Shown one piece after another: positions 4,517 to 25,039 of a stretch of DNA of 64,000 nucleotides; the stretch's first letter is position 1, and each line of letters opens with the position of its first letter. A program made the position numbers and the translations under genes. The notes below the pieces were generated by a model. That model worked only from the letters and a program-made list of their open reading frames with translations. It did no database searches and was not told the DNA's origin. Origin of the DNA: Amphiscolops sp. MND2022 (lineage: Eukaryota); assembly GCA_964187785.1 (NCBI GenBank), contig OZ076417.1, positions 47,244,001 to 47,308,000 of the forward strand. Reading direction: 5' to 3'.

Positions 4517-6737
4517 GGGTTTTGAAAAATTCAACTTTTTACATAAAAGGAATTACCATGGAGAGAGGTCAATGAAGGTGTTAATGAATGTCTGAGTTCG
4601 GTTGAATATGTTGAGTCAGGCTTAATGTGACGGCAGAGGTGATTTTAAGATTGATAAGAAATAGGGAGAATAGGTAATCACGCGAGGCAGGTAAAGAAGA
4701 GTGAAAAGAAAGTTTTCACTGAGAGAAGATTAGCAAAAAGATTCATTTGACTAGAACTCAAAACCAGAAGTGAACAAATTTCAATATTTGAACAAATAGG
4801 AGTAAGATCGAATAGAAAAAAATTGGTTAGAATCGAAGTTCTTTAGGAGTAATGTGGAAAATATTAAATCAGGTGAAAAAAATGAGTTTAGGAAAAAACA
4901 CGTTTTTTAAAATGGAAAAAAGACAAAACTGTCGGTAAAAATTCCATCTGAGGGCCATGGAAGGATCATAATAGGTATGCCAAACGTAAAGTTTGCAAGA
5001 TATAGGGGGTAGAATTGAAACTAAAGGGCGACAAAATTGAAAAATTGCATAGAAAATAGACAAAATTGTACATTGTCTTGGAATTAAAAGGCATTGAAAC
5101 ACAGGATATTAATCAGAAGCATGTGAAAGTTAAAGCGGTTGACAAAGACGAAAAAATGGGTGCTTGTGAACGAAAATTAAGAGGGTAGAACAAAAGTTTA
5201 ATGGCATCAAATTTAAAGTTTTTACATTATGTATGTTGCCAAATTAGTCAACATCTTTGAGGGAATTTATTAGTGAAGCAAAATAATTTACAAAAATATG
5301 CGTCGAGGGGGGGGGTCGAAGGTGAAATGGGTTCAATACGAATAGGAATTAAAGCAGGGGAGGAGAAAGATGGGGGAAAAAGCATTTGTACAATATTTAT
5401 GGGGTACATGTCAGCAGCAAGGGGATCGCAGTGAAAGCAATTATCTCAATTATTAGGGAGAATTTGTATATGTAGCTGTAATATTCGAGGGAACGTATTT
5501 TTGGGGGACTTAAATTTAATCAATTTTGAGGGAGTTTGAAAATGATTGACAATTGCATCGATATTTTTTGAACTTTATGGAATTCAATTGCTTGCGCAGA
5601 AAGGAGTTGGTTAATATTTTGTTCATATAGTTTTAGCGAAACGTTATAATAAGCTAGTTTCTGTTTCTATGCAGCTGTGTGGACAAGTTATTTAACGGGT
5701 GTTCCAGCTTCGTATGGAGGGGCATTCTTTGTTGCAAAACCCGAGTCAATTGACGGACTGCAGAGAATTGCTGCAAATGAGAAGAAGTCGCAACAGCATC
5801 TGGGGCAGAAGAGGAAGAGGCGTAGAAGACGAAGTCGGGGCAGTTGTGGGTAGCTGTGAAGTAATGGGAGACAGTGTAGATGACAGTGGAAGTGGCAAAA
5901 TGAAAGTTGACGAAGTAGAAGAAACAGAAGTCCAACAGTTTGTTGAGATGATTCTATGCCAGCAAGGCAGGAGGATAAGGAGTGGAAGAATAAAGTGATT
6001 TTTTTGCGACAAGATGAAGAGGATGTGTGAGATTTGAAACAAACTTTTCGATTTAAGGTTTTGTAGATGTATTTTTATTTTTGAGTGGTAGTTTTAAAGG
6101 TTGTGTATTTTGTGTTGTGATCAAAATTATTGATAACAGGTGAAGTGTCGAAGAGTAATAGAACATCTAAAAGAGTCCAAGATATCTTTTTAAACTGACT
6201 GCGAGTTTTCGACGATAGAGTGAAAATGCAAACATTGACAACGTAATTTCAAAAATTAGTTTGACACAGTTACCAACTTTTTCTTGTAGATTTTTGTAAC
6301 TTTTTCGGAGTAAAGTTATCCGGAGGAGATTGTGAAACTTCTATACAGCTCAATTATGCAACCACTAGAGTTTGGAATAAATGGGAATCAAACTTTAGGA
6401 ATAAAATGGAGAATAATGATATGAGGAAAACACAATTGTGTTTTGATAGAAAAAGGTAATGAAATACAAAGTGTATGACTTTCGAAAAAGGAAATAGGTG
6501 GACTCTTCTGTGAAAATATGATAAAATTGTAATGAAGAGTGAATATAGTAATCTCGTTTAACTGAATATGTCACGGAGAGATGAGAAATGATAAAATTTG
6601 CGTTTTTGAAAAGTGAAAAGGTTATGAAAGAGTATTTAATGATACGGAGGAAGCAGTCAAAAAATGAGAAGTACAATTTTGTAAAAGAGCAAATTTTGAA
6701 AAAAAACTTTTAGAAAAATTTGGAGAAAATTTGAATA

Positions 6738-6894
6738 GTATCCCTGTTGAAATCAACAAAGCTCTTCCAAAAATAGTTCCCCCATTTCCGAGTTTTCAGG
6801 TGAACCCGCAGCCTTCTTTAGGCTGCGGGTTCACCTGAAAACTCGGAAATGGGGAACTATTTTTGGAAGAGCTTCGTTGATTCAACAGGGATAC
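6738..6894. mobile_element. 157 bp palindromic (foldback) MITE-like insertion flanked by TA
   Basis: Arms 6738-6814 and 6820-6894 are reverse complements apart from one substitution and two 1-nt indels; loop TCTTT; TA at 6736-37 and 6895-96. Confidence 0.85.
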
Positions 6895-8233
6895 TAGTGA
6901 TGGGAAAATTTATATTGTTTTTTTTTCAAAATGAAAGAGGAACGTTTAGCGTTTGTGAACGTTTAGCGATTGTAAAGTTCAGTTGTGTCCAAAGGAGTAG
7001 TGTTTATATACAAACGCGATAAATAGAAAGCGATAGCGGTCATCAGGAGTTGTTTCAAACATATTATTCAATTTTGGGAAGAAACTTGGAACACTATTAG
7101 GAACAAGAGTTGGCAATAAGAAATCGTCATTGAGAGTAGGAGATTCGTTAGGAACAAAAAGAGGAGGGTCGTGACACGAAGCGAGTATTTATTACTGTTT
7201 AACTGGGTCATAATTGCGAAGTATGCCAATAGTGTAGAGGTGTAGAGTAGTGAGAATGATGAGAGAAAGGTGAAGTGATTTTGTGATTTTGGATGACCAA
7301 ATTTTGTGGGTGTTTCTGTTCAAGAAAGTGTTGGTAAGTTTGGTGATCAAGTTGTTAAAGTCATTTTGGGTTGGTAATTGGAATCGAAACAAGCGAAACA
7401 AGGAGAGTTGTTCTAAGATTTCGGAGGCGTAAGCAACATAGTGATCGAAGTTACGATCGTGTGGAAATCAGTCAAAGTATTAGTTTGAGAATTGTTTTTG
7501 CAGGGTGGAATACAGGAGGTAGAATACCCGAGTCAATGAAAACACGATCTTCAAGAACATTATAGTTCGTCTTAGAAAGGACAGTGTAGGTGACATTATC
7601 AATAGTAACTTAAAGATTAGTAGGCAGAGGAGTCCGCGAATGGCGAGTTTGAAGAGTAGAAGAGATGGGTTGAAAATGTAGAGTAGAAGAAAGCGTTGAA
7701 GATGATTTTTGAATGTCAGTTATTGTAGGTTTAGGAGTAGACTTGATTCAAAGCTTAATTGGAATAATCAGAGTTATGAGGAAGTTCAAGGGTACCAGAT
7801 TTGAGAGAAAGTGGTGGTGACAAAGAAGCAATACTAGAAAGAAGTTCTTCATGGCAAGTAGGTGAAGTCATTTTCAAATAGTAGTTGAGTTTTTGAAAAT
7901 GTATTTGTTATACAAATATTTTGTGATTTATATGACGTGCTAGGAAGATGTGACAGTGTAATAGGTGGCATCTAACAGTTTTGTGAGTAGAAAGGATAAG
8001 ATTCATATAAAGTATAGATTATGAAAAGAATATAGATGTTCGAAAGCAAGACAAGTTGAAGATATTAGAGATAAGATTTTTGCGAATTATATGAGAAATT
8101 AAAAAGAATTTAGCCGTTTTGAAGTTGCAACTGAACGATGAGCAAAGAAGAAGAGAAGTGATGAATTTTTATGGAAGGAAGAGACCTAAATTTATTTAGG
8201 TGGAAAGCGACAGAATGAATAAGTTTTCAAATC

Positions 8234-8734
8234 CAACCCGGTAACAGATTGTTTAAGGGCCTTAATTTGTAGCTACAAGTTATATTATTGTATACAGTAA
8301 AAAAGCATGGATGAAATACATGTGTACACCTGCTTGAATGCAGTTAATACGTACTATGCACGGTACAGCTTAGTTACGATAACTAATTTTTTAATGAATC
8401 ATTGTTCAATTTGACTGTTTTACGATGTAGTGGAATGAATTTGAGTTAAAATGAACATTGAGTTTTGATTGCATATAAACAAGGTGTAAGACAGTCAACT
8501 TCGACATCATTGTCTTTTTAGCAAACTGCAAATTGCTATATTTGCAAAAAATGGAAATTAGTCAAAATTTTGACTGAAATACGGAAAAGTCTATTTTTTG
8601 GACTAACTTCCACTTTTCACTAACTACGTGCCTTGACTACATTTCACTATTTTCCTTTACGCACTTACGCCAAATAACCATTTTACGGATTACACAGATT
8701 ACGCTGCGTGAACGAAATCCATTTTACCGGGATG
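8234..8734. mobile_element. ~500 bp insertion with 11 bp imperfect TIRs (caacccggtaa / ttaccgggatg)
   Basis: 10/11 inverted match; loses the host element's strand bias; subterminal ttacg repeats; TSD not confirmed. Confidence 0.5.
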
Positions 8735-9376
8735 TGTGTCGTAATATTAACGGGACTTTCGGGTTGATTAAATATACTATTGACAGATGTTAATGGGAAG
8801 TCATTTAATTTCTTTGGTGATGGAGTAGAAGGATGAATTTGCGTTGATTGCCATTCATTGAGTATGGAAGAATTAATAGAGGAGTTGTCAAAATTAGTGT
8901 CATCAGGAGAATGGGAACTAGGTAAATAGGGAAAAGAAGAAATTGAAGGTGATTGGGAATGACGTGGAGAAAAGTTCTTAGGAGGATTATTGGGTAAGCT
9001 ATAAATAGGAGGAGGGGCGAATTGTTGTCAGTTACCTGAGGGGTGGTGATGAAAGGGTAAAGTGGAGAAATACTAGAAGAAGAATTTTTTGGTGGACACC
9101 TTTGCATGTTGTTTTTAGCTCAAGTACTTAAAATTGTGGACTTAATTTTAGGTTTCTTTTTATCATCTTTAAAGTGTTTTAATTTTGAATTACCAGTAGA
9201 TTTGGAACGAGGAGGCGGAGATGTATCAGAATCATCGGAATCAGACTTAGAATCAGCAGGTTTTATCATAGCAGACATCATTGTTTTGGTTACGGTTCCA
9301 AAAAAGCCATAACCAAAAGATGAAACAAGGGACTTTGTTTTTTTAAAAGAAATTTCCTTACTCGAAAAAGGCGATA

Positions 9377-11340
9377 TCAACTAAGGAATGCGCTGAAAGC
9401 AAATTTTAGGAGGGGAGCAGTGTAAAAATAACTTCCACCTTGGGTTAAAATATAACATGAATACCCAAAAAAATTAACGAATGCATCCTTGAACCATTCA
9501 GGCGTAACGAAAGGAGTTAAATTTATTATATAGTCAAGAAGACCAATTCGAAGAGACTTGTAGAGATTATTCGGAAGGAGTTCAGAAATTTGTTTACTCA
9601 AGAATTGATAGCAAATAGCTTTACCAAGAAGTTGTTATGTATTATCAGAATGTTTAGCAAAGAGAACACGATTCCAAAAACGTTCGAGTTCCTTTGAGAA
9701 TAAATACCTGCATCTTAAGAAGTGAAGGTGTCGGGGTTTGAAGTAGTTTGAACTTGAGTGGGTTCAAAGAGTAGAGGATCTTCTTTATTCGGTTGTGGAG
9801 TTAAGACATAATATTGATCGGTGTCAGGATCAAGGGCAATAACATTTTGCCGGGTATTTTCACATGGTATTTGACGAGCATTATCAAAGGTTTGACGAGT
9901 TATAGGGTCAACATACATAACAGTATCAAGATAATTACCAGGTGTTTTTTCATAACATTGTTCAGCTATATATAGATGAGAAAGATGGTGAGGGCAGTCA
10001 TAAAGCCAGGCAGTTGAGCCTTCAAGAATTAAACAATTACTACGGTTTTGAGTTAAGAAAAAAACCAGCGAGTGGTGGGTTTTTAACAGACATTGCGAGA
10101 ATGGTTAAAAGTTGAGTTCGTTCTACTTCACAAATAGTATGCAGGGTGATAAGTTCAACGACTGACATTGTTTTACAAACATGAATTTTTGAGTAGTCTT
10201 TTTTAGTATTTACATGAGCTTCAAAGTCAATAGTGGCTGAATAGTTCGAGGAGCAGGAAAAAAGTGTTTGATTTGATTTATCAGAAATTAATTGTGCAGA
10301 ATGTCGTGTATATTGTTCAACATCAGGTAATTGAAGGGGGTTACGTTTACCAGAGTGCATATGAAATCCTTCTTTGTAGGTAATAAACAGATCAAGGTAT
10401 TGAGTGGCACATGAAAGTGTAGGTTTATTGCAAAATATTTAACTTTCGGGGAAAATTTCAAAGCGAGAGGATCGGGTTTGAGGTCTGGAGTCATGGTAAT
10501 GAGTTTGAGGAGGAACATTAGTGTTATTGGTAATAAAAAAGTGTTCGGTTTTGAGACAAAAACGGTTATCAAAGTTTAGACATACGTCCAATCAAAGAGT
10601 GAATTGAGAAAATTAAACAGAGTTCATCAGGAAACCGAACAATGGTGTATGGGGTTAGAAAAGTAGGGTTGCAAAAACCATCATCATGGAGGCAAGGTAA
10701 AGTGTGTCCATCATAAGTTATATTATTATCTTTGTCATCAAAATTGAATTCAACTTCTTTAACGAGTAAAAACCAACAATCTTTTTCAATTATATATCCA
10801 TAGCGGTCCCAACAAATATCTTTTTTTAGCAGTTGAGTTTAATTTAAGTTGAGAGTTTGTTATCCAAGCGAAAGCACCATAATCAAAAGTGTTAGTTTTA
10901 ATTAGGCGAAAAGGAGGTTGTTTATTTTCAAGAATGCGTTGTTTTTGATTATCATTAAAGAAGGTGATGAAATCACTACAATCAAACGCATTAAGATGAG
11001 GGTTATCCGTTCCATTGAGGGGACGAATAGCATGTTTGCTTTTCGTAAGGTCTATGGTACGAGGACGTTCCTTAATATTTTTGTGATAATCAGTACGATC
11101 ATGGCGACAGTATTTGTGATCAGATTGTGCGCAAACAAATTTTTCACAGGTCCAAGCCTTGAGACGTTTGGCTTTAGCGCGGAAGGAGGTAATAAAACCG
11201 TGAGGAAGACGGAAAAGAGGATGATCACCAACAAAAAGACTAAGAATAGTAGTAAGGATGTGGTATAGATTAAAAATGGACAGTAGTATGAGAAGGAATT
11301 GGGTGTGGACTTAAGTTATGAAACATAACAGTGACTTCAA
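9377..11340 (-). pseudogene. env: env: class III fusion-glycoprotein-like, frameshifted
   Basis: Stitched translation: hydrophobic N-terminus ...AKRLKAWTCEKFVCAQSDHKYCRHDRTDYH... ITYDGHTLPCLHDDGFCNPTFLTPYTIV.. CEVERTQLLTILAMSVKNPPLAGF/FLTQNRSNCLILEGSTAWLYDCP..EQCYEKTP..YVDPITRQTF..QIPC, then a membrane-proximal hydrophobic segment (EWFKDAFVNFFGYSCYILTQGG..). Confidence 0.7.
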
Positions 11341-11490
11341 CTTTAGCTTCAAGACTTGTAGTGTCGAGTCATTGAAATTCTCTTCAAAGACGTTCGTCAG
11401 AATATTGAATATTGGAATTTAACTCATGAGTAGCAAGATTTAAATGTCGGGGAGCACGAAGATGGCTTGAAACAAGAGTATTGTTGACAG

Positions 11491-12258
11491 TTAGAGGGCA
11501 TTCAACAGGATTAGGTGTAGGTGAGGTAGAAAATGATCAGTGTTAAGATCAATATTTAGAAAGTGTGACACAGAAGAACGAACCCTGGCATTTTGAGAAG
11601 TAGGTCGAGAGAAAAGATGTTCTGTTCGACGATAGGAAAAAATAGAAGAGCGTTGAGAAAAGACGGTATCAACACCAGTTGTTTGAAATTTTTTGTCAGA
11701 TAAAAAAGAATCAGATGAGCGAGATTGAGCGTGTTGTCTCTCTAAGGGGGAGTTTGTGCTTGGCAAAGAAGGCGTAGGGTTACGGTCATTTCTAAGAACA
11801 TATCTATGGCGGGGACGCCAACTAATAGTAGATTCCGAAGTGGTTTCTAAAAGATTATCCAAGAAGGAAGTTGTATGTTTAGAAGCGGAATTAGTAGGAG
11901 GAAGACGACGATAATTGACAGAAATTGTGTCAACGTCACTAGGATATATTTCGCTTAGTGTGTCAAAGGATTCAAGAACAAGGATTGTGAACGGTTTGGG
12001 AGGTGGAAGAGAAGGGCCAGGTTGAAAATGTTTACAGGGTTGTGGTACAGGAAGTGAAGGATCAAATCTAAGACGTCCTTTACTGGAGGTAGGAACTAAG
12101 ATTGGTGTAAAAGGTTGAGGTTTGTTAATTTTTTGTAGAAGGATTGGGTCGCAGTCACTAGGGTCTGGAATATGAGGATGGGGAGGTGGAGGAGAATTAG
12201 TAGATGTGATGTCAAAAGGAGTCAAAGGCAATTCTGTATCAGAAAAAGGAAGTGTCAA
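11491..12258 (-). CDS. 255 aa Pro/Ser/Thr-rich ORF between IN and env (IN tail or accessory protein)
   Basis: Open frame in the ORF track; low complexity; contains RHRYVLR; no recognised family. Confidence 0.4.
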   Translation of the reverse strand: MTLPFSDTELPLTPFDITSTNSPPPPHPHIPDPSDCDPILLQKINKPQPFTPILVPTSSKGRLRFDPSLPVPQPCKHFQPGPSLPPPKPFTILVLESFDTLSEIYPSDVDTISVNYRRLPPTNSASKHTTSFLDNLLETTSESTISWRPRHRYVLRNDRNPTPSLPSTNSPLERQHAQSRSSDSFLSDKKFQTTGVDTVFSQRSSIFSYRRTEHLFSRPTSQNARVRSSVSHFLNIDLNTDHFLPHLHLILLNAL

Positions 12259-12899
12259 AGACTTTTGGGTTGTAGTTTAATGGGTTAGGATTGGTTTTGG
12301 GAGTGAATGTTGGAGCATTAGAAGGAGTGGTGTTTAAGGAGGGGTGATAGGAATGGGATTTAAAGGAGGACGATGTAAGATGAAGAAAGATTGTTATAAT
12401 AAAGAGAAGTGTAGTTAGGAATTATTGTATTTATGGATGATAGATGTTAAGATGTGTTAAAGTTCAGAACATGAAACAGATTTAATTTAGCCTCGTTTAA
12501 CTGACTGTTCACCCAAAGATTATGGACAAAATGAACAGAGGGTAGGTGTGGAATTTGGTAATTTGAATTTGGATATCAATTCTCAGGCATATTTAAATGT
12601 CTAGACACCAGACGATTCAGTGAGAGTCTGACAGGTAATGCAATTAAAGATTGATATTTATATTAAGGGAGGAACTTTTGTGGGTTTTGAGTTATGATAG
12701 TCTTTGGAAGGGGGAGAGATTGTAAATTATATGTTGAACGGTGAGCTCAAGTATGAGTGAGTAATGATTGAGAGTCTGGTGAATGTTAAAAAGAGAACCT
12801 TGAAGAGTCAGCAACACGTGGAAAAATCTGAGGTAAGGAGGTGGAGTTGAATGTCATTGACGGAGATATGTGAACAAAAAAATCGGTTCTTTAGGATAC

Positions 12900-14100
12900 A
12901 ATGGCAAATTATGAACGCAGTGATTGTGAAATGTAGAGCCATCTGGGGCCATAATCATGAAAACATCAGATAGATGTTGAATAATTTTGTACGTGCCAAT
13001 TCGGAGGGTTTTGAATTTAGTTGAGAGTTTGACAGGTTTTAGGTTGGTGTGTATAACAAAAGTAATAAGAGGAAGTTGTTATAATTGAGTGGTTTAAAAT
13101 GTGAAGTTTTGTGAATTTAATTTATTGGTTATTTGACGATGAACGGTAAAGTAGATTCCTAACATTGCATGTTCAGCTGTTCAAAACCACGAGAAAAAGG
13201 ATTGGCAAAGTGTGAATGGAAAAAAAAAGATTGAGGTCTTGGTCACTTTATTGTGTATGAGATGGAAGTGAATTACAATATGTTGCATTACAATTTTTGG
13301 ATAAGTCAAGGGAGAGACAAAGTTAATGGGATACGAGGATGTGTATAGAAAATGATTTGATGTGGAGAAAGTTGAAGTTGAGGAAGATGAGTTGTATTGA
13401 GAGCTCATTGTATTGAGAGTTTGGAATCACAAATTAATTGGAGGACTTTGTAAAAAGAAACGTAGATGAGTTCCAAGGCTACGATTTTGGACTTGGACTA
13501 AACTATTTGTCCAAGAAGAAAATTAAGTACGTGGAGTTTGGCTAAAATTGGAGCGTATCGTAATAAGAGGAAATATGAGGAGCAGTTTTAGTAGCAATAA
13601 AATTACTGATTGTATCTATGATAACAAAAATATAGAAGTTTCCTTGGAAGAAAGGAGAAATAGGTCCTTTAGTGTCCATAGAGAATCTATAACTTAAATG
13701 AGTTGCGTATTCATAAAATGGTAAAGGAGGGAAATATTATTAGCTTTGAATGGTTTGTTGGTTCGGCATTCAATACAATAATGATTGAGAATAGAGAACC
13801 AAAAAGATAATTGAGGAATATAAAAAATTTGGTTGACAATTTCAATAAAAAGTTTTTCACCGGAATGACCATGTGAACGCGTTTTGTTAAAAGCAGCAGA
13901 AAAGAGTGTAAATGGCAAACAACAGCGAGTTTGGTTATTAGAGGGTTGAGTTTTGATGAAGAGTTCTTCAAGATTCTGGAGTTTGGTATATAGTATTGTG
14001 TAAGACGTGAGTTTGGGTCATTAAATAGATGTTGGAATTGTTTGTAATATCTATAGAGAAAAGAGTTAGCTTTAATAACAGTGGTCAAGGTGTAAAGTCT
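12900..14100 (-). pseudogene. Integrase (HHCC + core), disrupted
   Basis: TRSHGHSGEK...YCIECRTNK zinc-binding motif (13694-13918) followed by FSMDTKGP..FVII core start. Confidence 0.8.
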
Positions 14101-14799
14101 TTGTTTTGGTTCGAGCCATTTATAAACAGTAAGGAGAACGGGATCAATATTTTTGAGCTTGAAGGTGAACCGGTATTGTTGAAAAGGTATCAGATGGGAG
14201 AAAAAATTTTCAAAAGTTTTACAAGGACCAAAAAAGAATGGATCGAAAAATGGTAATGATTGAGTAGAGGTGGGTTTAATAGGAGATTGTATTATAGCAT
14301 TCGTATGAGTAGAATCAGCATGAGCCGAACCATCAGAATCGGAGGAAAAAAATTTGTCGTATGGGTTAAGATGTTTTGGGAAAGGTGAAAGTCAATAAAT
14401 TTTAATATTGACTTTCAGAGAAGAGGGTACGGACAAATTGGGACAATTGTGATTGTAAATTTTGCTGAGGAATAATTTAGTAACAGGATCATCCTCTTCA
14501 TACCAATCAATTTCGTTTAAACGAAGGATTTGTTGAAGTAGTGTTTTGACTTTATTTTCTATAGGTTTCTTATATTCGATTAAAAAAGATGATACAGATT
14601 GAAAAGAATGAATCTAAAGGAGTATAAGTGACAGTGTTACCTTTATCTTGAATACGAGGCGAAAATTGATCATCACCGTAATCAACCAAAATTGGGTGTG
14701 AATCATTTTTTGAGTGGGCGAAACATCTTCAGTTTTAACTAAATAGTGGACTTGTTTTATCGAGTTATTGGGTTTTGGTTGTATATATTCAACATGTGG

Positions 14800-16100
14800 A
14801 GGGCACGTTGTGTTTTGTAAGTGACAAATTTTATTTGTAATTTGGGAAAAATCTCAACTGATCATAACAGCAACATTTAAATTAGTACCTGCAGCATGAA
14901 TCAATTGAAGGTCTGCGAATTTTGGTAATAACGTTTGAGCTTTATTTGAGTTGGAGTGAAGGTTCCTTTACGGGTAAAGAGGAAATGAATAGGACTGTGA
15001 TCTGTGACAACAGTGATTATGAATTTAGAACTGATAATAATAAATTCGTATTCAGAAAAAGCAATAGATATAGCACAGAGATCTCTCTTACATCTAGAAA
15101 GTTTTTGTTCTTGTGTTGTCAAAATACGAGAGTCATAAGACCTAACTTGCATTTTTATGGCGGTGTTAGGCTTAAACAATTTGGCACCTAGTCCAAGGAG
15201 AGAAGGCGTCAACAGCATTATATAAAGAGTGAGTGGTATTAGTGATTGCAAGCTCAGCTTCTTCTGAGAGAGAAGCTTTAATTTCATTGAAAAGTTTGTC
15301 TAATTCAAGAGTCCATTCAAATGAAACATCATCATGGAGAAGTGTGTAAACGGGTTTGAGTGAAATGTAGAGTTTGTTTATAAATTTGGAGTAGAAAATC
15401 ATTGCACCAACAAATCGCATTTGGTCAATTTTGGAAGTGGGGGTTCTCAATTTGTGTGTACCATCGACTTTAGAGGAGATCGATTAATTATTAGTGTTGC
15501 CAATTTCATGTCCAAGAAGTTTGACAGTGAGTTGAAGATGAAAGGATTTTTCAAGGGCAATTTTAAGATTGTTAGAGCTACATCTTTGGTGTAATTGTTC
15601 AATTGAATCTAACATATGAGTTTTGGTATGAGCAAGAAGTAGGATATCGTCGAAATAAACAAGTGCGAGACCTCAATGAAAGATTTCTTGAAAAAACGAA
15701 TACATTTGTATGGTGAAAAATTTGGTAGTCCTTTAAGACCATGAAATTCTCGGATAAAGGCATAAAATTGCTCTCCTGAAGAGAAACTGGTAAGAGAGAT
15801 GGTGTCTTCATCCAAAGGGGCATGTGCATAAACATACATGAAATCAATTGCAGATTTGAATTTTTTGTTGGCGCGGGCAAATTGAGGAGCTAAAGGTTCA
15901 ATAGGCCAAGACTCAAAGAATTGATTAGTGTTAGAGTTCAATTTTTTAGTGTCAAGGACGACTTTAATTGTCTCCTTCAGGGATAATAATGAGCGGATTT
16001 AAAAAGGTTGTACCTTTATGGATTCATCAGAGGGAGTTTAGTTAATTTGTCTGAAACGAATTCTTTGGTGCAAATTCTAAAAGGAATGGCTATTATACCA
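14800..16100 (-). pseudogene. Reverse transcriptase + RNase H, disrupted
   Basis: DFMYVYAHAPLDEDTISLTSFSSG...HGLKGLPNF; LVYFDDILL (~15637-15665); F.GAMIFYSKFI; RNase H ..LCAISIAFSEYEF...TDHSPI. Confidence 0.9.
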
Positions 16101-16668
16101 ACATCATTACGATGAGTATCATAGCAATGTTGGTAATTAACAAAATTGACGCAAAGTTTAAATATTCATCATCAGTGACATCATAGTATTGAAAGTCAAA
16201 TTTTTTCAAGAATCGTTAAACAACTGGGAGTACGGTAAAGAAGGACAGTTTAAAAGCTGAGAAGGTTGTAGTCTATTACTTTCAATATTATTTCTTTAAA
16301 GAGAACGTCGAACCGGCTTTGGTTCTGAGAGATCTGGGTAATAGGTATGAAATATAGTGTGTATTGAAGAGTTTACATCATTACCATTATAATGTGGTGG
16401 TTTAATATCAGTGACAGGGACTTCAATGCAGCATATAAATCCTGGTTAGAGGATGACTGAATGATGAGTAATAGTTTGGATTATAACAGAGCAGCTATTG
16501 GGTTCGATTTTATTATTTCGTTAAACTTAGAGAAAAGTAAAGGTGGAATTGAAGCAACTATTGAAATATGGATGTGGAGTTGAAGTAAATATAATTTCAT
16601 TTTCAGAGGTTGTGAAAGTTAAAGGAAGAGTAGGTTGGATTGGAAAAAAATGATTTGAGAAGCTTACA

Positions 16669-17200
16669 TTAAATTTTGTGTATAACATTGGCTGTGTAAA
16701 TGTAAGAGAAATCTTTTTCTTTAGGAGCAATAAAAGGTAAAGAATTGACATGCGATTCATGAGTTGTATTAAATAAAAAAGACATGTGATCAATGTTAAA
16801 AATTTTTACAATTTTTGCGAAGAAGGGAGTTCCAAGTATATTATATTTGATACTTGTGACTGCAAATGAAAATACAGGAGTGCGAGTACCTCCATGGATT
16901 GAGGTATGAAGTATGAGCATCACATCATATAGTATAGGAACTTCAGCTTTATTGGCTACTGTGAGGGTTTTAAAGTCATATTTGCAGGAGTGGATTTGGA
17001 ACACTTAAGTAGGTGATCAGGTAATATTGCGAAAGTGGGTATTTTTAAAACACAAAAAGAGGCACCGCTGTCAAGCAGGGAAGAAAGTTCTACTACAGAG
17101 GGTACAGAGGTGTCTTCTGGTGGTTTGAAAATGTATAGATTGACATAACAAGTGGAAGGAGTTAAGGTATTAGCATGATCATTTGAAAGAATTGAATTTT
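16669..17200 (-). pseudogene. Retroviral-type aspartic protease
   Basis: LLDSGASFCV at ~17050-17075 and NILGTPFF downstream. Confidence 0.85.
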
Positions 17201-17249
17201 GTGAACCAGAACAGTTCTTTGGATGGTATATTTTAATTTCAAACTTAAG

Positions 17250-18750
17250 TTCTATGGAAGAAGAATGGTGCGAAAGTGATGTCGGTTGTTGACTGAGGTC
17301 AGCAGTGCAGTGGGTTTGTGTTGGTAGTTTGATTGATTTTTTGAAGTAAAGTGAGATCGAATTTGATAGCTATCAGCCCGTGGTTTGGAAGGAGAACAAG
17401 ATGGTGATTTATAGGGTCGAAAAAAGGTACTCATTAAATCTTGAGGATCCTTCGCGAGAACGCGAATAAGTTTTGTATGGGATACGAGAGGATGTTGGAT
17501 TGTACTATGAGCGAGATGGGTAATATGTGCATGAAGGAGACTTTCGTTAATATTGGTTATAACGGGGTTGTTTACGGTCAAAATAAGGAGAATGGTTTTC
17601 AGAGATGAGATTATGATAATTTTTGAGCGATATTCAGAGCGACAAGGAGAACGACACTTATATCGAGATTCTCGACAGAAATTTTGATAATGCTTACTAT
17701 TATGTCCACTACGATAACAAGGAGTTTAGTTATTATATTTGTTGGAGGGCGTTTTAAAGTGTTGATAAAAGGAAAGAGTAGGTGACTTTGATTGAAGTTA
17801 AGATTTGTTAGGCATATTTAGTCTACGAAAACAAGTGGAGACAGAATGAGTCTTTTAATGGCAGAAGGAACAATATTTTTTATAATTGAGGTTTTGATTT
17901 ATTATTTGGGTCTACAGCTGGTATTTGTGGAGATTCAAAGACATTATCTGTGACAGTGGCATTTTGGTTAGAAGTGTCTGAGAGAGTATTAATTTCAAGC
18001 AAAATTACTTGCGTTTTAACCTTTTCAATTGTGATATCTTCAGAGTCAACCATGTTACAAAGAGAGTGGAAGAGAACGGAATGTTCAAATGAACTTGAAA
18101 AACGTTTGACTTGACGTTTATTGGCAATATTGTTATTTTTTTGGTGACCACGAGTAGAAAGTTCATTACATTTGAGGTTTATGGTGGATAGGTTTATGTT
18201 TAACAAGAATTTCAACTTTTGAAGCATAGTGTCTAACATTCTTGGTATAATTTTTGACGAGAGAGAGTGTTTCAAGAAGAGTGTTTCAAGTGTTTTCAAG
18301 TCTTGAGTGCAAGGTTAAGGTAACTAAGATTGTATATAAAGAGGCTGAGGTCCAAGTTGAAATGTTACACATGCAATGAGGTGAGCTAAAAATGTTTCAG
18401 AAGGATACGTGTGATCCAAGCACTGAAACGTTTTAATGGGATCGGAACTAGCAGCAAAAGGAACAGAAGGAGTCATGGTTGAAGAGGTTGAGATCAAAGT
18501 GGATTCAAAAGATAGGTAAAATGAGACGGTGGGAGTGGATTAGGAGGAAGGGGAGGTGGTGGCAAAGAGGAAGGTTATAAAAACCGGGATGGAGTGATGC
18601 GTAAGAATCATGAGAGGTAGAGGAAGGATGGAACGAAAGAGGTTGAAGTGTTGAAGAAGGATTTTGGTGCATTGGAGAGGAAGATGGGGGCTTAGGATGA
18701 GAAGAGAAGTAGGTAAGTATGTTTGAGAAGAGGTAGCTTGACATTGAGTA
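17250..18750 (-). pseudogene. gag: gag (capsid-like, one CCHC knuckle, Arg/Ser-rich tail)
   Basis: LDHTYPSETFLAHL..VTFQLGPQP; YCSFCH*KTHSVSTC (C-x2-C-x4-H-x4-C, ~17830-17874); RS-rich stretch ~17640-17700. Confidence 0.75.
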
Positions 18751-18929
18751 GTAATTACATGAGGAAAAGAAAGAGGGACTGGAGGAAGAGTTTGATGATA
18801 ATGAAAAGTAGATGGTTGTATAGTAATAGTATTTGGTGGTGGGTGAGAATTAGAAGAAGTGTTATATTGGTGTGTGTGGTGAGTGAGAGTTTAAAGGTTG
18901 AGTAGTAATGGGGTTGTTTAAAATAGTAG

Positions 18930-20420
18930 AAGGTGGGTCAAGATTTAGAGCGGGATTACCAATATTATGAGTACCTTATAAAACAAGGCACATGGAATGG
19001 TTTGGTGAGAGATATTAGATATACAAGGTGTGGTTTGAAGAGAGATATCAGAAGTAGTATCTACAGAAGGTATTTGAGGACGATGTTTTGCATATTTTTT
19101 AACAGGAGGAGGAAGTTTAAGACTTTCATCAATGCTATGATTGTCATAGGAGAGGTAGTTAAAATCAGTGACAATAAAGTCGCGGAGTTTATAGAAAAGA
19201 ATAGTTTCAGAGGTATCAATAAAAGGGAGGAGTTCGTCCTCAGAAAATTTGGAAGGAAAGTTATTACAAGCGTCTGGGAATTTAGAATCCCAATTGAGTT
19301 GGTAATGATGTCTAAAGAATTTACGAAGAAATAGAGGTTAGATTCAATTTTATTCATAATTTGAGTGTTTAAAGTGAGATTTTGGAAACACTGATATTGG
19401 AAATGATGAATTTGATGGATATCGGTAGTGAGCCAATGATGCGGGTTGTTTTCAATAGTGCGAAACTGTTCAATGTTAGGAAGGTCAAAAAAGGATTCTT
19501 TTCGGCGAAGTGCTTGAATAGCAGATGGAATGAAAGTATGTTTATGTAAAAGATTATTTTCGGTTTTTGAGGAATGTGGTAAAATTATGAGCGATAGGAT
19601 TATGATTATTGGTAGAGTATATGTTTTTACGAAAGGTATCAGTTGAATTAAAAGAATAGGTGGTAAGAATAGAAAACGAAGGTTCATCAGAAGTTTCTAC
19701 TAGAGAATGGGTGTCAATATAATAAAGATAGGAGTTGTGGTGTTCACGTATGAGGGGAATGGTGTAAATATCTTTCGGGTATGTTTCAAAAGAAAGCGGA
19801 ACTGTTGAGTTATAGATAAGAATTTTAAGGAGTTTGGTTAAAGTTTGGGTGGTGTCGCGTGAATTGCGAGAATGAGACTCATTGAGAGCAAAGGGGAGTG
19901 TGAGTAAAGGAGGAGGTTGATCAGTCATCAAGAATAACGATGAGGACTAAAAATTCGGGAAATACGGTCAAGGAGGGTTTCAGGATCTATAAGAGGTTCA
20001 GGGGGAGGAGGATGAAGATATATTGTGTGACGCTGATAGTGGTAATATGGTAGGAGATGGGAATAGAATTATTTGTATGAAAATAAAATATGGCAATGAG
20101 TAAGAGTTGTGAAAAAGTGAAAAATGGGTGGGGGTTTAAAAGAACCAGAAACATAAGTATATGAAAGGAGAGAGGTGGATTAGTTGATGAGGGTGTGATT
20201 AAATTATGGTGAGGTTAATGATAAAATGATGGAGTTTGAAAAAGTAGGGGTTATGGAGTATGGAAGGTTTTATGTGAGAATTGGGAAAATAGTTGAAAAG
20301 AGTGGTGATTTTTTTTCAAAAAGAAGAATGAGAAAATCAAGCATAGCAAAAATGTAGAAAACAAAAAGAAAAATGGGTGCAAGAATTTCAGCTAAAAATA
20401 ATATAGGATGTGAAAAATAG
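18930..20420 (-). pseudogene. ORF0 upstream of gag (unknown function)
   Basis: PLSFETYPKDIYTIPLIREHHNSYLYYI and NNPHHWLTTDIHQIHHFQYQCFQNLTLN motifs shared with three other copies. Confidence 0.65.
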
Positions 20421-20589
20421 TTATCGGGGAATGAAACCAATCCTGAACTTGTCGACGACAAAAGGAAAGATTGCAGGCCAAAAAGATACAATAAATCATT
20501 AACATACAAGTGGAATCTTTTAAAGAAGGCATAAAAATTATGAAAAATATTTGAAATGAGTTGTACTAGCAGAAATGTTGAGTTTTTGA

Positions 20590-20880
20590 GTAGTACAGAG
20601 AAGGGTGTACCGCCAAAATGTCGAATCAATGAGGTTAGTACTGAAACTGTACAGACACGAGTCGAACCAACTTGATTAGTACAGAAAGGGTGTACCAGCG
20701 CGAAGCCGAATCATTTCCATGAGATTAGTACAGAAAGGATGTACCGACTACGAGGTCGAACCACTTTTTTGTGATTAGTTCAGAAGATTTTTTATGTTGT
20801 ACCGACAAACAGTCGAATCACTTTTTTGTGATCAGTACAGAAGAATTGCCTTTTTGTACCGATAATGAAACATCGAAACA
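20590..20880 (-). repeat. Leader tandem array (~45-55 bp, ..tagtacagaa.g..tgtaccg..tcgaa(t/c)ca)
   Basis: About six imperfect units directly 3' of the PBS. Confidence 0.8.
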
Positions 20881-20939
20881 AAAGTTCGTTAGCACAAAAA
20901 GTTTGTAGAAAACGGGAGGAAAGAAGGGAAGCGCACTTG

Positions 20940-20947
20940 TCGCACCA
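20940..20947 (-). promoter_or_regulatory. Putative PBS TGGTGCGA of element A
   Basis: Abuts the LTR end (caagtactttgac|tggtgcgacaag). Confidence 0.7.
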
Positions 20948-21271
20948 GTCAAAGTACTTGTGTTTTGTGTTGAGATGTTTAATTTTTTTACAAGGAGTAT
21001 TTTAAGAAGACTCTAACAGAGCTGCAGTATTAGGTCTTGAAAGCAGTTACAACTTGATTGTGAAGACTTTATCAGTGTTGTTTTCCGTTATAAATCAAAT
21101 AGGTGCTTTACAGTATAGGGTATGGTACTGAATATAAATTAAATATATCTAAATGCATGATACACATTTAAAGTCTACACATTCATAAATTGGATGATGG
21201 GGGAAATGACCGAAAACAACGGTTGATGAGGGTTAAGAACGAATAAAAGATTAGAGGTATATCAAAAGACA
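20948..21271 (-). repeat. 5' LTR of element A
   Basis: Starts TGTC on the minus strand; homologous to 4192-4516. Confidence 0.85.
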
Positions 21272-23325
21272 CCTCCTTGAGTATTTGAAGTTCTCGCTCC
21301 AGAAATAGCCCTCAGCGATGTTAAGGGGTCTAGTTTTTTGCCGCTTTACAATTTTCTGTGGTTTCTTCGCATGTTTTGTAGAATGAATAGTCATGGAATT
21401 CGTTTACACAAAACTTGGCCACTAAAGACACCTACCCTATTTGAAAAAACATTGTTTCAGTGCTTTTCAGCCAAAGCAAGCCAATAAATAATTTACAAGT
21501 TGTGTAACGTCAAGCTATCAGCTACTTTCTAGAAGTGGAACAATGCCTAGATTGCTTGAACAGGAGACCAGTGTCTTACTACAACCTAGACATTGGTTTT
21601 TAATCCCAAAATGGTCTCCTAAGGGGACGTTTCTAAGGTCAAAGGAGGTTCCTCAGGTAGAGCTCCGAGGCGACATGCCGGCACTCTCAAAGTCTGGACA
21701 CGTCCCAAAAGCCTGTAAAAACGAATCCTAAGGTTCTAACGTGTTCCCGCGACTCCTAAGTACTTCCGAGGTCCAAAATTGGTGTTCAGCAAAAACACAT
21801 TATATTTGCAGAATTAGATCTAAAATCAGGAAAATTGGATTATGCTAGATCCAGTTTCATCACGAACCTGCCAAAAACATTAAAAACAATGAAATCAACT
21901 TTATAAGAGTTCTTCATGATGGTTTCGGAGTTCTTGCAAAGATCCACTGACAGGTTGCACCTTGATTTTGGGGGGTCGTTTCAGACTTTTTCCTGGATGA
22001 TATGGCACCACACCACACTGGGTTTTACACTCATTTCAGCGTCTTCTGAGTGTATTCGGGTGTCGGGGCATTACGGGGTGGGGTGTTTTTGTTGGTTTTT
22101 TGTCTTTCTCTTCGATTTCTGGGACCTGCCCGGTCGGCCATTTTTATTGTGGCAATTTTTGTTATCGCACATTTCGAATTTTTCATCGAAATTTTCGAAA
22201 ACTTTTGCAACCCCAATTGCTGGACGTTACATTTTTAACGTTTTCAGAACATTCCGTAGCTAGTTTATTTCGGAACGGAAATAAACCCGCTCTTGAATGG
22301 GCGTCTTGTTAATCAGTTATCACTAGCTAAAAGCAATATGACACAATCCCTATTTCAGTTCAAAACGACGCTGTTCAAATCAACTCCTAAAAACCAAATT
22401 ATTGCGGGAATCTTTGGGAGCAATGTTCAATTCTTAAATAAAGAACCCAGAAAATTTTAAGGGACGAGACTAAAGGAATTCATGGCTTAAGAAACAACAG
22501 AAGGGAATGGAAACTAGTTTTAACTGAATTGAAACAAAGAAAAACTTAACTTCAACGAAATTTCTTCACCAAAGATTCGATAACACTAATGTTGATCGAA
22601 GACTTTCAATGCTCAGTCAGAGAAAACTCAAGTCCAGCAGGAGGGCAAATTTTTTGAGTCTATCAATCCACGCATGGTGCTAGAAAGAAACGCACTGTGA
22701 GGGAGGAGTTTTTCGGTCTTCTGAAATGGCCGCAATGAAGAAACCGGCCGAAGAAAGAATGGCCGTTTGCGAAGATTTCCAAAATTATGAGGAAGGGTAA
22801 TATGATTCGGGACCCGCAAGAACACTATTATAGCAGTCTTTGCGGGTTTTCAATTGTAGTTTCAACAAGGTTTTATTGGTTACCATTGAACATTCTCTGG
22901 TAGGATCCATTTCATTTCAAAATATTGAACCACCAAATGGAAATCCTCCGAACTCCATGAAGAGAAATTGAAGAAGAGTCCCAACGGGTCAAAATGGCTA
23001 AGTTTTCCAACATTTGTCAGAACTTTTTGAACTTGGCTCAAATTTCCAATTGGCTCAACAGAGAAGATTTTCAAAAGGTTGGAAAAACCTTGAATATGGT
23101 TAATGAAAGTTTTCGTCACAAAGTTAAAACTATTCAGACCAAATCTAAACAAAATGAAACACGTTCAGACAAATAGCTGATTTTTTCACTGAAGTTTCTA
23201 CTAGTTTACGAATATAACGAAGACAAATTTTCAGTATTCAAAACGTTTTTTTTCTAAATTATAGCTGATTTTCTTGTATTCAATTCTTTCATGAAACAAT
23301 TCCTTTCTCTCTGGCTATCAGTGAT

Positions 23326-24396
23326 ATGTTTTCCAAGTTCATTCGCAAATGCAATTTGTTATCTTTTCGACCTCTCAATCGTCTTGTTTTCGAAGGGATC
23401 TTCTTTTTTGTGGCACCTGCTTGTGTCGTTGCTTTCTTTTACATCAAGCTGGGGGTGGATTTGATGAGGCGATCGCGCTACCAAGCCCGCAATCGGATTT
23501 TAACTTTTGCCTTTGTTTTGAGCTGGCTAATGTGGATAGTTTGCTGGTCGCCCAGCTTGGCTATCATGGTTGTGCAGTATTATGATATACAGCGTTCTTT
23601 TAATGCAGACAATAGTCGTACAATGGAATATTACTACTCACCTATTTGGACATACGTAGTATCACTTCGCGTACCACTCCAATTACTTTACTCTCATCTT
23701 AACCCTTTTATTTACCTGATAGTGTTGAAAAAATTTCAAAAACATCACATAGACACACTCAAATGGATTTTCCGCATGTTTTTACAAACTCCAGTTGTGC
23801 AAAACAGCAACTTGAAAAACGCTTTTAATTTCTTGAAAGCAATTTGTTCAAGCATCGCTTTTGTATTAGCATGGGCGGTTTTGTTAATTGCATTTCATCA
23901 CGCAAGTGAATACTCTTCGTTGCTGAACTCTGGGACAACTAAAGCCTCAAGCATTTTGAGACAAGCGCTCGATAGCTCAAGGAAAAGAATTTCACTTGAT
24001 TATCCGCTTTCCAGAGATTGGGATTCGAATTTAAATATCAGGTCCGAATGCGGAGAATTAAGAGGGCTCTACGACCTGAAATTCAAAAGATGTTATTTCA
24101 TTATTGATCATCAAACCCAACCACTGAATTCTAGTGAGCTACTGAGTTCTTGCATGTCCAATGGGGGATATTTATGCTACCCTAGAAACAAAGAAGAAAT
24201 TAGTCTGCTTTGGAAATTCTTCGAACTCTGGGTTGGGCACAACTTCAACTTTGCAACTTACGATTATTACGCATTTTCTTATTTATACGAGTATTTTGGT
24301 TCAGACAATTATAAATATTTCTTGAGGTTTTACAAAGCCCACTTGGGGTTTGAACGTCTTGGTAAGGAATGCACAATGTTGGACAATCGTTACTGA
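23326..24396 (+). CDS. Class A GPCR-like C-terminal half (ECL2 Cys, TM5-TM7) + extra TM + C-type-lectin-like domain; TM1-4 not seen
   Basis: 356 aa ORF: TM5 FFFVAPACVVAFFY, TM6 FAFVLSWLMWIVCWSP, TM7 LYSHLNPFIY (NPxxY), eighth hydrophobic span SSIAFVLAWAVLLIAF, then ECGEL..KRCYF..SSCMSNGGYLCYP..EEISLLWKFF. Confidence 0.75.
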   Translation: MFSKFIRKCNLLSFRPLNRLVFEGIFFFVAPACVVAFFYIKLGVDLMRRSRYQARNRILTFAFVLSWLMWIVCWSPSLAIMVVQYYDIQRSFNADNSRTMEYYYSPIWTYVVSLRVPLQLLYSHLNPFIYLIVLKKFQKHHIDTLKWIFRMFLQTPVVQNSNLKNAFNFLKAICSSIAFVLAWAVLLIAFHHASEYSSLLNSGTTKASSILRQALDSSRKRISLDYPLSRDWDSNLNIRSECGELRGLYDLKFKRCYFIIDHQTQPLNSSELLSSCMSNGGYLCYPRNKEEISLLWKFFELWVGHNFNFATYDYYAFSYLYEYFGSDNYKYFLRFYKAHLGFERLGKECTMLDNRY

Positions 24397-24639
24397 AATC
24401 CAAGTTTCTGTAGAAGTTACAAATTCAAGAACCGCGAAAAAGACTATCTAGCTTCGATGCCATTTTAGAGTTTGTCAGGTTGACTGATTATTCAAAACCA
24501 AAGCATTGATTCTAAGACAACCAATTATTTAATTGACAACCGATTGTAAGAACGCATCTAAACGGTCCTCTGTTTGGTCATTGCAAAATATCCAATTTTT
24601 ACCCAGCTAGCCAAAGCAAAGGGTCTCCTGATTGTTTTT

Positions 24640-25039
24640 TCCATTAGCGTAGTTAGGGCGTAACGTTTTCGAGCCTGATCTCTCCTCTGATGTTCCGGCA
24701 CTGTGAGAGTTTTTTTAAAATTTCTTGTAAAACAGTCGTTGGGCAAATTTTTGAGCTTCTTGCGCTGTGTGTGTCAAACGGAGTGCTTAGATATTCTTTA
24801 CTTCAACTAAATTTGATCTATTTGTAGGCGGTAAAGAGTTCTTGAGTGTCGATGGAAAACTAAAAATCAGTAGTGAGACGGTGGATTGGTTGTTCTCGTG
24901 GGAAAGAGTGAATGGAGTTTTTGTGCATCGTGATTTCCATGGCCCCAATCTCTGTTTAACTGTTTTGCCCCAGACTCTCTTCGAATGTTGCCCATCTGAC
25001 TTGAATTTTGCAGCCATTTGCTGTAAGGAGTTCTATTAA
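24640..25039 (+). pseudogene. Probable second or continuing CTLD-like segment, disrupted
   Basis: DVPAL*EFF resembles EISLLWKFF; open frame from 24791 DLFVGGKEFLSVDG..DWLFSW..GPNLCLT..ECC..AICCK has CTLD C-terminal Cys spacing. Confidence 0.45.

What the first reader, a model, noticed from the sequence alone, without database searches (positions are those of the whole stretch)
23326..25039. GPCR with an eighth TM helix and C-terminal C-type-lectin-like domain(s)
Seen: after the NPFIY TM7 and a short tail comes another hydrophobic span, then a CTLD-like Cys pattern, and probably a second decayed CTLD. Established: in known GPCR-lectin combinations (adhesion GPCRs) the lectin lies at the N-terminus. 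Inference: TM8 would flip the C-terminus outside, creating a receptor with a tethered C-terminal carbohydrate or ligand sensor, possibly a lineage-specific chemosensory or symbiont/immune receptor family.
Basis: partly seen in the sequence, partly recalled or inferred. Interest (0 to 1): 0.75.

Follow-up and report, generated by a model that had tools for sequence, protein, structure and literature searches.

The report
Eight-helix GPCR with outside lectin-fold tail
This stretch holds the last two exons of an animal receptor gene that joins a rhodopsin-type G-protein-coupled receptor to an extra eighth membrane helix and one C-type-lectin-fold domain, predicted to sit outside the cell; I found this layout in no annotated protein or paper.

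Summary
Window 23322-24361 encodes TM5-TM7 (CWSP, NPFIY), helix 8, a strongly hydrophobic eighth span and the N-terminal half of a Cys-rich domain. After a 466-bp GT-AG intron, 24828-25039 encodes the C-terminal half of the same domain. It is one C-type-lectin-like domain (CTLD), not two.

The TM1-4 exon lies about 42 kb upstream, outside the window, and is open.

The gene belongs to a family with at least 131 matching loci in this 1.07-Gb genome. Many members carry 7TM, TM8 and CTLD in one open frame. Models of paralogues match class A GPCR structures, and their C-domain matches solved CTLDs (Z 14.5). Charge bias around TM8, conserved cysteines and glycosylation sequons put the CTLD outside the cell. 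The canonical sugar-binding motifs (EPN/QPD, WND) are absent.

dN/dS against an intact paralogue is 0.19. No RNA data exist, so expression and topology are inferred. Three of the four nearest copies are pseudogenes.

All family hits in public protein sets are unnamed ENA sequences, from at least two assemblies. I found no paper describing the layout.

This scan already found the same family elsewhere in this genome (s1-151600, s1-183094, s1-183082, s1-178861).

The parts
1..23321 (+). 3' part of putative intron 1 (about 42 kb). It ends in a polypyrimidine tract and AG at 23320-23321.
   Evidence: The TM1-4 exon is at G000:C9:47224507-47225192 (L022:1504-2189), 19.5 kb before the window's start. 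It is open from Met to a phase-2 donor TCCAA|GTTTGT. Its identity to paralogue exon 1 copies (82, 73 and 70%) tracks that of exon 2 (82, 74 and 67%).
23322..24361 (+). Exon 2: end of ECL2, TM5, TM6 (CWSP), TM7 (NPFIY), helix 8, cytoplasmic linker, TM8, stalk, and the N-terminal half of the CTLD.
   Evidence: Open frame. At least 131 paralogous loci. dN/dS 0.19 against intact paralogue L004.
23383..23460 (+). TM5 (approximate)
   Evidence: Hydropathy peak LVFEGIFFFVAPACVVAFF, KD 2.33. Aligns with TM5 of paralogues.
23701..23715 (+). NPFIY motif of TM7
   Evidence: Read directly from the sequence. N and the following residues are nearly invariant in the family alignment.
23839..23895 (+). Eighth hydrophobic span (TM8), predicted N-in/C-out
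   Evidence: KD 2.52 over 19 residues. Family mean is 2.41. The K+R bias is on the N-terminal flank in 29 of 33 members and never reversed. The equivalent segment is helical in the full-length paralogue model.
24037..24361 (+). CTLD, N-terminal half: beta-hairpin Cys pair, alpha-1 with Cys C1, expanded alpha-2 region, 'HLGF' (WIGL-like)
   Evidence: Alignment A1. HMM match. Paralogue model is a CTLD.
24362..24827 (+). Intron 2 (466 bp, GT..AG, phase 1)
   Evidence: The donor and acceptor sequence context and exon 3 are conserved in L002, L003 and L005. The join restores the single-domain alignment. DNA contigs run through it unspliced, as expected for genomic DNA.
24828..25039 (+). Exon 3: CTLD C-terminal half (FLSVDGK, GPNLC = C2, EC = C3, ICC = C4) and stop codon TAA at 25037-25039
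   Evidence: dN/dS 0.25 and 0.18 against L003 and L005.

Best explanation
Window 23322-25039 holds exons 2 and 3 of a three-exon gene of about 645 codons. Exon 1 (TM1-4) lies about 42 kb upstream, outside the window.

The protein is an eight-pass receptor. It has a divergent class A (rhodopsin-type) GPCR core with xRY, CWxP and NPxxY. After that come helix 8 and a 40-60-residue cytoplasmic linker, then an eighth transmembrane helix oriented N-in/C-out. A roughly 50-residue stalk then leads to one disulfide-bonded, glycosylatable C-type-lectin-like domain outside the cell.

The TM8-stalk-CTLD module has the topology of a type II CTLD receptor such as CD69 or NKR-P1. The family therefore looks like a GPCR fused at its tail to such a receptor.

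Most likely mechanism (inferred): the outside CTLD captures a ligand, more likely a protein or other non-canonical ligand than a Ca2+-bound sugar. Through the stalk and TM8 lying against the helix bundle, it modulates G-protein signalling of its own 7TM core in cis. The large, tandemly arrayed and diversified family suggests environmental, microbial or symbiont sensing.

Shown here: sequence anatomy, family conservation, purifying selection, and the folds of paralogues. Inferred: membrane topology, splicing, expression, signalling and ligand.
For: - Anatomy and splice model.
- Family: at least 131 matches to exon 2 and 149 to exon 1 in the genome, most without stops. 35 fetched open frames carry TM7, TM8 and a complete Cys-domain in one frame.
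- GPCR core: Pfam 7tm_1 at 32.5-45.6 bits (cut-off 30.5) in paralogues. The AF2 model of L044 (pLDDT 80.6) matches NK1R, beta-1AR and M4 with Foldseek probability 1.00 and TMt 0.6-0.74.
- CTLD fold: the AF2 model of the L007 C-domain (pLDDT 81.9, pTM 0.80) gives CTLDs for all top 50 Foldseek matches. VIA Z is 14.5, rmsd 2.3 A over 127 of 132 residues of DCAR2.
- CTLD sequence signal: the domain profile hits 32 CTLD chains among 34 PDB sequences (E 0.007-1.2). In 1.84 billion representatives it reaches mannose-receptor-type multi-CTLD proteins (E 1e-8 to 2e-4). Pfam Lectin_C scores 15-16 bits at the same place in three paralogues.
- Topology: TM8 KD mean 2.41. K+R 3.79 before TM8 against 1.03 after it. 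2.6 N-x-S/T sequons per C-domain against 0.24 in the TM7-TM8 linker. Six to nine Cys per C-domain.
- Selection: dN/dS 0.19 against L004 overall, 0.12 for the 7TM part and 0.19 for the CTLD N-half. Exon 3 gives 0.18-0.25. Both alleles keep the frame.
- Functional analogue: CD69, a type II CTLD protein, activates S1PR1 in cis through its TM helix (PMC9949048).
Against: - No RNA run holds the stretch, so splicing of the 42-kb and 466-bp introns, and a single transcript from TM7 to the CTLD, are unproven.
- The target's own pieces get no Pfam hit.
- TM8 has only moderate model confidence (pLDDT 57-71). I could not measure how it packs against the bundle.
- Three of the four closest paralogues (L002, L003, L005) carry stop codons.
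- No canonical sugar-binding residues are present. No ligand, G-protein coupling or tissue is known.
Confidence: 0.72

Rival explanations
1. This particular copy is a silent relic. The family architecture is real, but the gene in the window is no longer expressed or spliced correctly and is on its way to becoming a pseudogene like its neighbours.
For: L002, L003 and L005, its closest relatives in the same 280-kb cluster, have 1-2 in-frame TGA stops. The exon 1 copy inside the window (45407-46122) is frameshifted. Intron 1 would be about 42 kb of compositionally odd DNA. No RNA evidence exists.
Against: All three exons are open, and the splice-site context matches that of the paralogues. dN/dS is 0.19 against the intact L004. 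The second allele (P0001, 99% identical) is also open. All conserved cysteines and motifs are kept.
Confidence: 0.22
2. TM8-stalk-CTLD acts as a separate polypeptide, made from an internal start or promoter or by cleavage in the cytoplasmic linker. It would then work as a type II CTLD receptor that associates with GPCRs non-covalently, as CD69 does with S1PR1.
For: The module has exactly the type II CTLD receptor layout. The TM7-TM8 linker is long, poorly conserved and modelled with low confidence. Many short database ORFs contain only this module, though these may be ORF-calling fragments.
Against: There is no stop between TM7 and TM8 in any of the 35 complete open frames. The linker shows some constraint (dN/dS 0.38). 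No stand-alone gene of this module was identified.
Confidence: 0.1
3. The C-terminal domain stays inside the cell or in no defined compartment. The eighth span would be a peripheral or re-entrant segment rather than a transmembrane helix.
For: Topology was not measured. TM8 pLDDT is only 57-71. The target itself has a single sequon in the C-domain.
Against: Six nearly invariant cysteines lie at the positions of the CTLD disulfide-forming cysteines, which would not form disulfides in the cytosol. A sequon (LN-x-S/T-EQ) is conserved in most members. Hydropathy is 2.4 over 19 residues, with a consistent positive-inside bias.
Confidence: 0.05
4. The domain is a classical Ca2+-dependent carbohydrate-recognition domain, and the receptor is a sugar sensor.
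For: The best structural matches include true lectins: DCAR2, langerin, DC-SIGN and CD23.
Against: No EPN/QPD motif in the long-loop region and no WND before C3 in any of 29 aligned sequences. The position before C3 is E or P, and the residues before C2 are G-P-A-V. The best sequence-level matches are NK-type non-lectin CTLDs: CD69, KLRD1 and CLEC2D.
Confidence: 0.07

Closest known systems
Class A (rhodopsin-like) GPCRs, Pfam PF00001 7tm_1; nearest by language-model features are invertebrate chemosensory or Srw-like orphan receptors (scores 0.77, leads only)
   Same: Seven-helix fold. R of the DRY motif, CWxP and NPxxY-x5-F, followed by helix 8.
   Different: The acidic residue of DRY is replaced (FYRY, AFIRY). 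The chain does not end in the cytoplasm; it re-crosses the membrane and carries a folded ectodomain at the C-terminus.
[quoted passage not shown]
   Same: N-in single helix, stalk, one CTLD with an N-terminal Cys pair plus C1-C4, and no Ca2+/sugar motif. These are the best sequence-profile hits and are among the best structural hits.
   Different: Here the module is not a free-standing protein but the C-terminal extension of a GPCR. The alpha-2 region is expanded, and in one subfamily it carries long Asp-Tyr-rich inserts.
CD69-S1PR1 complex (PMC9949048)
   Same: A type II CTLD protein's TM helix lies against a class A GPCR in cis and controls its activity. That is the same set of parts as in this family.
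   Different: It consists of two gene products that associate non-covalently, in vertebrate lymphocytes. Here it is one polypeptide. Whether TM8 contacts the bundle is not shown.
GPCR-type proteins with N-terminal lectin domains (adhesion GPCRs; polycystin-1 with an N-terminal C-type lectin domain, PMC9672506)
   Same: A lectin-fold ectodomain combined with a multi-pass signalling core.
   Different: Those carry the ectodomain at the N-terminus, with GAIN/GPS autoproteolysis and a class B2 or 11-TM core. None of these features is present here.
Eight-helix enzymerhodopsins (my own knowledge, not tested here)
   Same: An extra helix added to a seven-helix core changes the side on which a terminus lies.
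   Different: There the extra helix is N-terminal, the core is a microbial rhodopsin, and the fused domain is a cytoplasmic enzyme.

Membership tests
Class A rhodopsin-like GPCR (Pfam 7tm_1) | Pfam 7tm_1 match above the gathering score | tested here: inconclusive
   The target's exon 2 alone (TM5-7 only) gives no hit. Full-length paralogues score 32.5-45.6 bits against a cut-off of 30.5; others fall below it.
Class A rhodopsin-like GPCR (Pfam 7tm_1) | Seven-helix bundle superposable on solved class A receptors | tested here: met
   Model of paralogue L044 (pLDDT 80.6): all top 50 Foldseek matches are class A GPCRs, probability 1.00, TMt 0.6-0.74. This was shown for a paralogue, not the target.
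Class A rhodopsin-like GPCR (Pfam 7tm_1) | Motifs E/DRY (TM3), CWxP (TM6), NPxxY (TM7) | tested here: met
   FYRY in exon 1 (R and Y kept, acidic residue lost), CWSP and NPFIY in exon 2.
Class A rhodopsin-like GPCR (Pfam 7tm_1) | Couples to heterotrimeric G proteins | not testable with these tools
   Needs a signalling assay.
C-type lectin-like domain (CTLD) superfamily | CTLD fold (two helices, two sheets, long loop) | tested here: met
   Paralogue L007 C-domain model: VIA Z 14.5, rmsd 2.3 A over 127 of 132 residues. 531 chains reach Z of 8 or more, and all 50 listed are CTLDs. The target's spliced domain matches the same family HMM end to end.
C-type lectin-like domain (CTLD) superfamily | Conserved cysteines C1-C4, plus the N-terminal pair of long-form CTLDs | tested here: met
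   C5, C19, C47, C164, C175 and C186 (L007 numbering) are 90% or more conserved, and all are present in the target.
C-type lectin-like domain (CTLD) superfamily | Pfam Lectin_C above the gathering score | tested here: not met
   14.7-15.8 bits against a cut-off of 22.6 in three paralogues. No hit for the target pieces.
Ca2+-dependent carbohydrate-recognition domains (true C-type lectins) | EPN or QPD in the long loop, and WND before C3 | tested here: not met
   Absent from all 29 aligned sequences. The only EPN lies in the alpha-2 region of four paralogues.
Type II CTLD receptors (NK-receptor-like) | Single N-in/C-out signal-anchor helix, stalk and CTLD as a free-standing protein | tested here: not met
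   The orientation and order of parts fit. However, the module is continuous with TM7 in every complete open frame.
Adhesion GPCRs | N-terminal ectodomain with GAIN/GPS, and a class B2 7TM | tested here: not met
   No 7tm_2 or GPS hit in any member scanned. The ectodomain is C-terminal.

The most novel reading that the evidence does not exclude
The family is a covalent, single-chain version of the CD69-S1PR1 principle. TM8 docks on the helix bundle, and ligand binding by the outside CTLD switches the receptor's own G-protein signalling. This would give the animal lineage a repertoire of over a hundred receptors that read proteins or surfaces (microbes, algal symbionts, conspecifics) through a GPCR output. 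That would be a new way of building ligand specificity into class A GPCRs.
Probability: 0.3. Interest if true: 0.85.

Novelty: new variant of a known kind. Interest (0 to 1): 0.68.

Why it matters
To my knowledge, class A GPCRs are described with an outside N-terminus and an inside C-terminus. Here an eighth helix turns the tail outward and adds a folded binding domain, and the family has more than a hundred matching loci, several of them tested here and found under purifying selection. That would be a distinct receptor design.

It gives a natural test of whether a tethered single-pass helix plus ectodomain can gate a GPCR in cis. That principle is so far known from the two-protein CD69-S1PR1 pair.

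It also shows that gene annotation and Pfam-based screens miss the family. All public hits are unnamed, and both domains sit at or under the Pfam thresholds.

Tried and rejected
- 'Second decayed CTLD': rejected. It is the C-terminal half of one domain behind an intron.
- TM1-4 exon inside the window upstream of 23326: none found. The only copy in the window (45407-46122) lies downstream, is frameshifted, and belongs to the next, broken paralogue.
- RNA evidence: none. The four runs that hold the stretch are genomic DNA contigs of one sample.
- Transposon origin of intron 2: an approximate 8-bp direct repeat, GGTAAGGA/GGTAAAGA (7 of 8 bases), lies at the intron start and the exon 3 start. I found no terminal inverted repeats, and no other copies among the fetched DNA apart from the paralogues' own introns. 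This is left as a note.
The window's other long ORFs have no Pfam hits.
- Language-model atlas search: only generic class A GPCR clusters, score 0.77.
- TM1-4 exon for the second-species homologue P0007: not within 8 kb upstream.
- Folding the target's own spliced C-domain: not done. The spliced sequence has no reference and was not typed.
- Five literature searches found no description of a GPCR with a C-terminal CTLD or an eighth helix.

Full report
**What is in the sequence**

The window is low-GC eukaryotic DNA, G000:C9:47244001-47308000, from a 1.07-Gb assembly. ORF 23326-24396 (+, 356 aa) reads as follows:
- TM5.
- TM6 with CWSP.
- TM7 with NPFIY (23701-23715).
- A helix-8-like LKKFQKHH.
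- About 41 mostly polar residues.
- The span AICSSIAFVLAWAVLLIAF (23839-23895). Its Kyte-Doolittle mean over 19 residues is 2.52, above TM5 at 2.33.
- About 50 residues of stalk.
- A Cys-rich domain beginning CGELRGLYDLKFKRCYF.

**The two pieces are one domain**

A strong donor (CTTG|GTAAGG, GT at 24362) and an acceptor (TTTGTAG|, AG at 24826-24827) join the frame in phase 1 to 24828-25039. That exon supplies FLSVDGK..., GPNLC, EC and ICCKEFY-stop.
- The donor and acceptor sequence context and the third exon are conserved in the close paralogues L002, L003 and L005.
- In more distant paralogues the whole domain lies in one open frame.
- In alignment A1 the target's two pieces fill the N- and C-terminal halves of one domain with six nearly invariant cysteines.
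- An HMM built without the target matches the spliced product as a single domain, positions 1-162 of 174, at 128.5 bits.

**The rest of the gene**

The ORF's ATG is not the start. The exon begins at 23322 behind a polypyrimidine tract and AG.

A TM1-4 exon was recognised in paralogue L004. Its only match inside the window is at 45407-46122, downstream. That copy is frameshifted and belongs to the next, broken paralogue, L002.

The matching exon for this gene is at G000:C9:47224507-47225192, 19.5 kb before the window's start.
- It is open from Met through ...SFYRYLLVCHP... to a phase-2 donor TCCAA|GTTTGT, which fits the acceptor at 23321|23322. L004 has the equivalent donor and acceptor sequences.
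- Its identity to the exon 1 copies of L002, L004 and L005 (82, 73 and 70%) tracks that of exon 2 (82, 74 and 67%), so the two exons have diverged together.

The gene model has three exons and about 645 codons, with introns of about 42 kb and 466 bp.

**Family**

Exon 2 finds at least 131 places and exon 1 at least 149 places in the genome. Most have no stops, and many lie in tandem clusters.

Of the open frames I fetched, 35 carry TM7, the eighth span and a complete Cys-domain in one frame. Several are complete intronless genes of 619-700 codons.

**GPCR core**

Full-length paralogues reach Pfam 7tm_1 at 32.5-45.6 bits against a cut-off of 30.5. The target's exon 2 alone gets no hit.

An AlphaFold2 model of L044 (pLDDT 80.6) shows seven helices, helix 8, a further long helix at 387-417, and a beta-rich C-domain. 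All top 50 Foldseek matches in the PDB are class A GPCRs, with probability 1.00.

**C-terminal domain**

The model of the L007 C-domain has pLDDT 81.9 and pTM 0.80. L007 is 34-40% identical to the target's two pieces.
- All top 50 Foldseek matches are CTLDs.
- The best VIA score is Z 14.5 at rmsd 2.3 A over 127 of 132 residues of DCAR2. The other 49 rows shown are all CTLDs, at Z 13.4 or more.
- The sequence profile hits 32 CTLD chains among 34 PDB sequences. CD69, KLRD1, tetranectin and CLEC2D are on top, with E-values from 0.007 to 1.2.
- Pfam Lectin_C scores 15-16 bits, below threshold, at the same place in three paralogues.
- Against 1.84 billion representatives the profile finds 121 proteins. 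The weak tail consists of annotated mannose-receptor-type multi-CTLD proteins.

EPN/QPD and WND are absent from all aligned members. It is therefore a CTLD of the non-lectin kind.

**Topology (inferred)**

Across 33 members:
- The eighth span has a mean hydropathy of 2.41.
- The 15 residues before it hold 3.79 K+R on average and the 15 after it hold 1.03. The N-terminal flank has more in 29 members and never fewer.
- N-x-S/T sequons average 2.6 in the C-domain against 0.24 in the TM7-TM8 linker. One sequon, LN-x-S/T-EQ, is conserved in most members.

Together with the conserved CTLD cysteines, which are expected to form disulfides, this places the C-domain outside the cell, which requires the eighth span to cross the membrane. 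I could not inspect model coordinates, so how TM8 packs against the bundle is unknown. Its pLDDT is 57-71.

**Is this copy alive?**

For:
- All three exons are open.
- dN/dS against the intact L004 is 0.19: 0.12 for the 7TM part, 0.38 for TM8 plus linkers, and 0.19 for the CTLD N-half.
- Exon 3 gives 0.18-0.25.
- A second allele is also open. It carries D87Y and A94T, is seen in read contigs, and appears as P0001 in ENA assembly ERZ25074608.

Against:
- L002, L003 and L005 have stops.
- Intron 1 is very long.
- No RNA run exists. The four holders are genomic contigs that run straight through intron 2.

I put about 0.2 on this copy being silent.

**Distribution and novelty**

None is in NCBI or UniRef.

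P0007 comes from a different assembly (ERZ26859043). Its best match in this genome is only 37% identical, so at least one other organism has the family.

Five full-text searches found no GPCR with a C-terminal CTLD or an eighth helix.

The nearest functional parallel is CD69. It is a type II CTLD protein whose TM helix contacts TM4 of S1PR1 in cis and activates it (PMC9949048). The present family contains the same parts in one chain.

Earlier notes of this scan describe the same family at other places in this genome (s1-151600, s1-183094, s1-183082, s1-178861). I reached the same reading independently and tested it here.

**Verdict**

The finding is a real and unusual receptor architecture. 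Expression, topology and function remain to be shown.

Noticed in passing
window 45407-46122 (+): A second copy of the TM1-4 exon, 82% identical in protein to this gene's exon 1. It has a frameshift near 45727-45742 and an in-frame stop. It is the partner of the broken paralogue L002, whose last exons lie just beyond the window's end. The cluster G000:C9:47.03-47.31 Mb holds four copies of this subfamily (a fifth, L004, lies about 2.7 Mb away), and three of the four have stops.
   Followed up: partly
window 1-22000: About 22 kb in which the + strand is strongly C-poor (GC skew +0.23 to +0.56 in 10 of 11 bins; 2001-4000 is -0.09). There are no tandem repeats and only one dispersed 288-nt repeat. 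It lies inside the putative 42-kb intron 1. It looks like strand-asymmetric decay, for example of old mobile DNA.
   Followed up: partly
L022:2185-2192 with window 23332-23339; window 24360-24367 with 24830-24837: Both introns of this subfamily begin inside an 8-bp sequence that is repeated at the start of the next exon's conserved coding part (TCCAAGTT/TCCAAGTT exact; GGTAAGGA/GGTAAAGA, 7 of 8 bases). This is what an insertion with an 8-bp target duplication that became an intron would leave. Intron 2 has no terminal inverted repeats. Earlier scan notes report hAT-made introns in this genome.
   Followed up: partly
L029, L030, L033, L035-L037, L039 (G000:C9:43.69-43.78 Mb and other chromosomes): One subfamily has a long Asp-Tyr-rich insert (DYDYEYDYDY..., up to about 60 residues) in the long-loop region of the CTLD. 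It may be a tyrosine-sulfated acidic patch. Several members of this subfamily are truncated before the last cysteines.
   Followed up: no
window 23584 and 23605: Read contigs of two of four runs (one sample) carry G>T and G>A, giving D87Y and A94T. These are the same two changes as in database protein P0001 from ENA assembly ERZ25074608, so this is an allele of the same species. Both changes are non-synonymous.
   Followed up: yes
L027:1-4177: In the other organism's contig (ERZ26859043), a Ty3/gypsy-type retrotransposon (aspartic protease, RVT_1, RNase H, integrase) lies upstream of the family member P0007.
   Followed up: no
window 30122-30321: A run of 200 N (assembly gap or masked). It was left untouched.
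   Followed up: no
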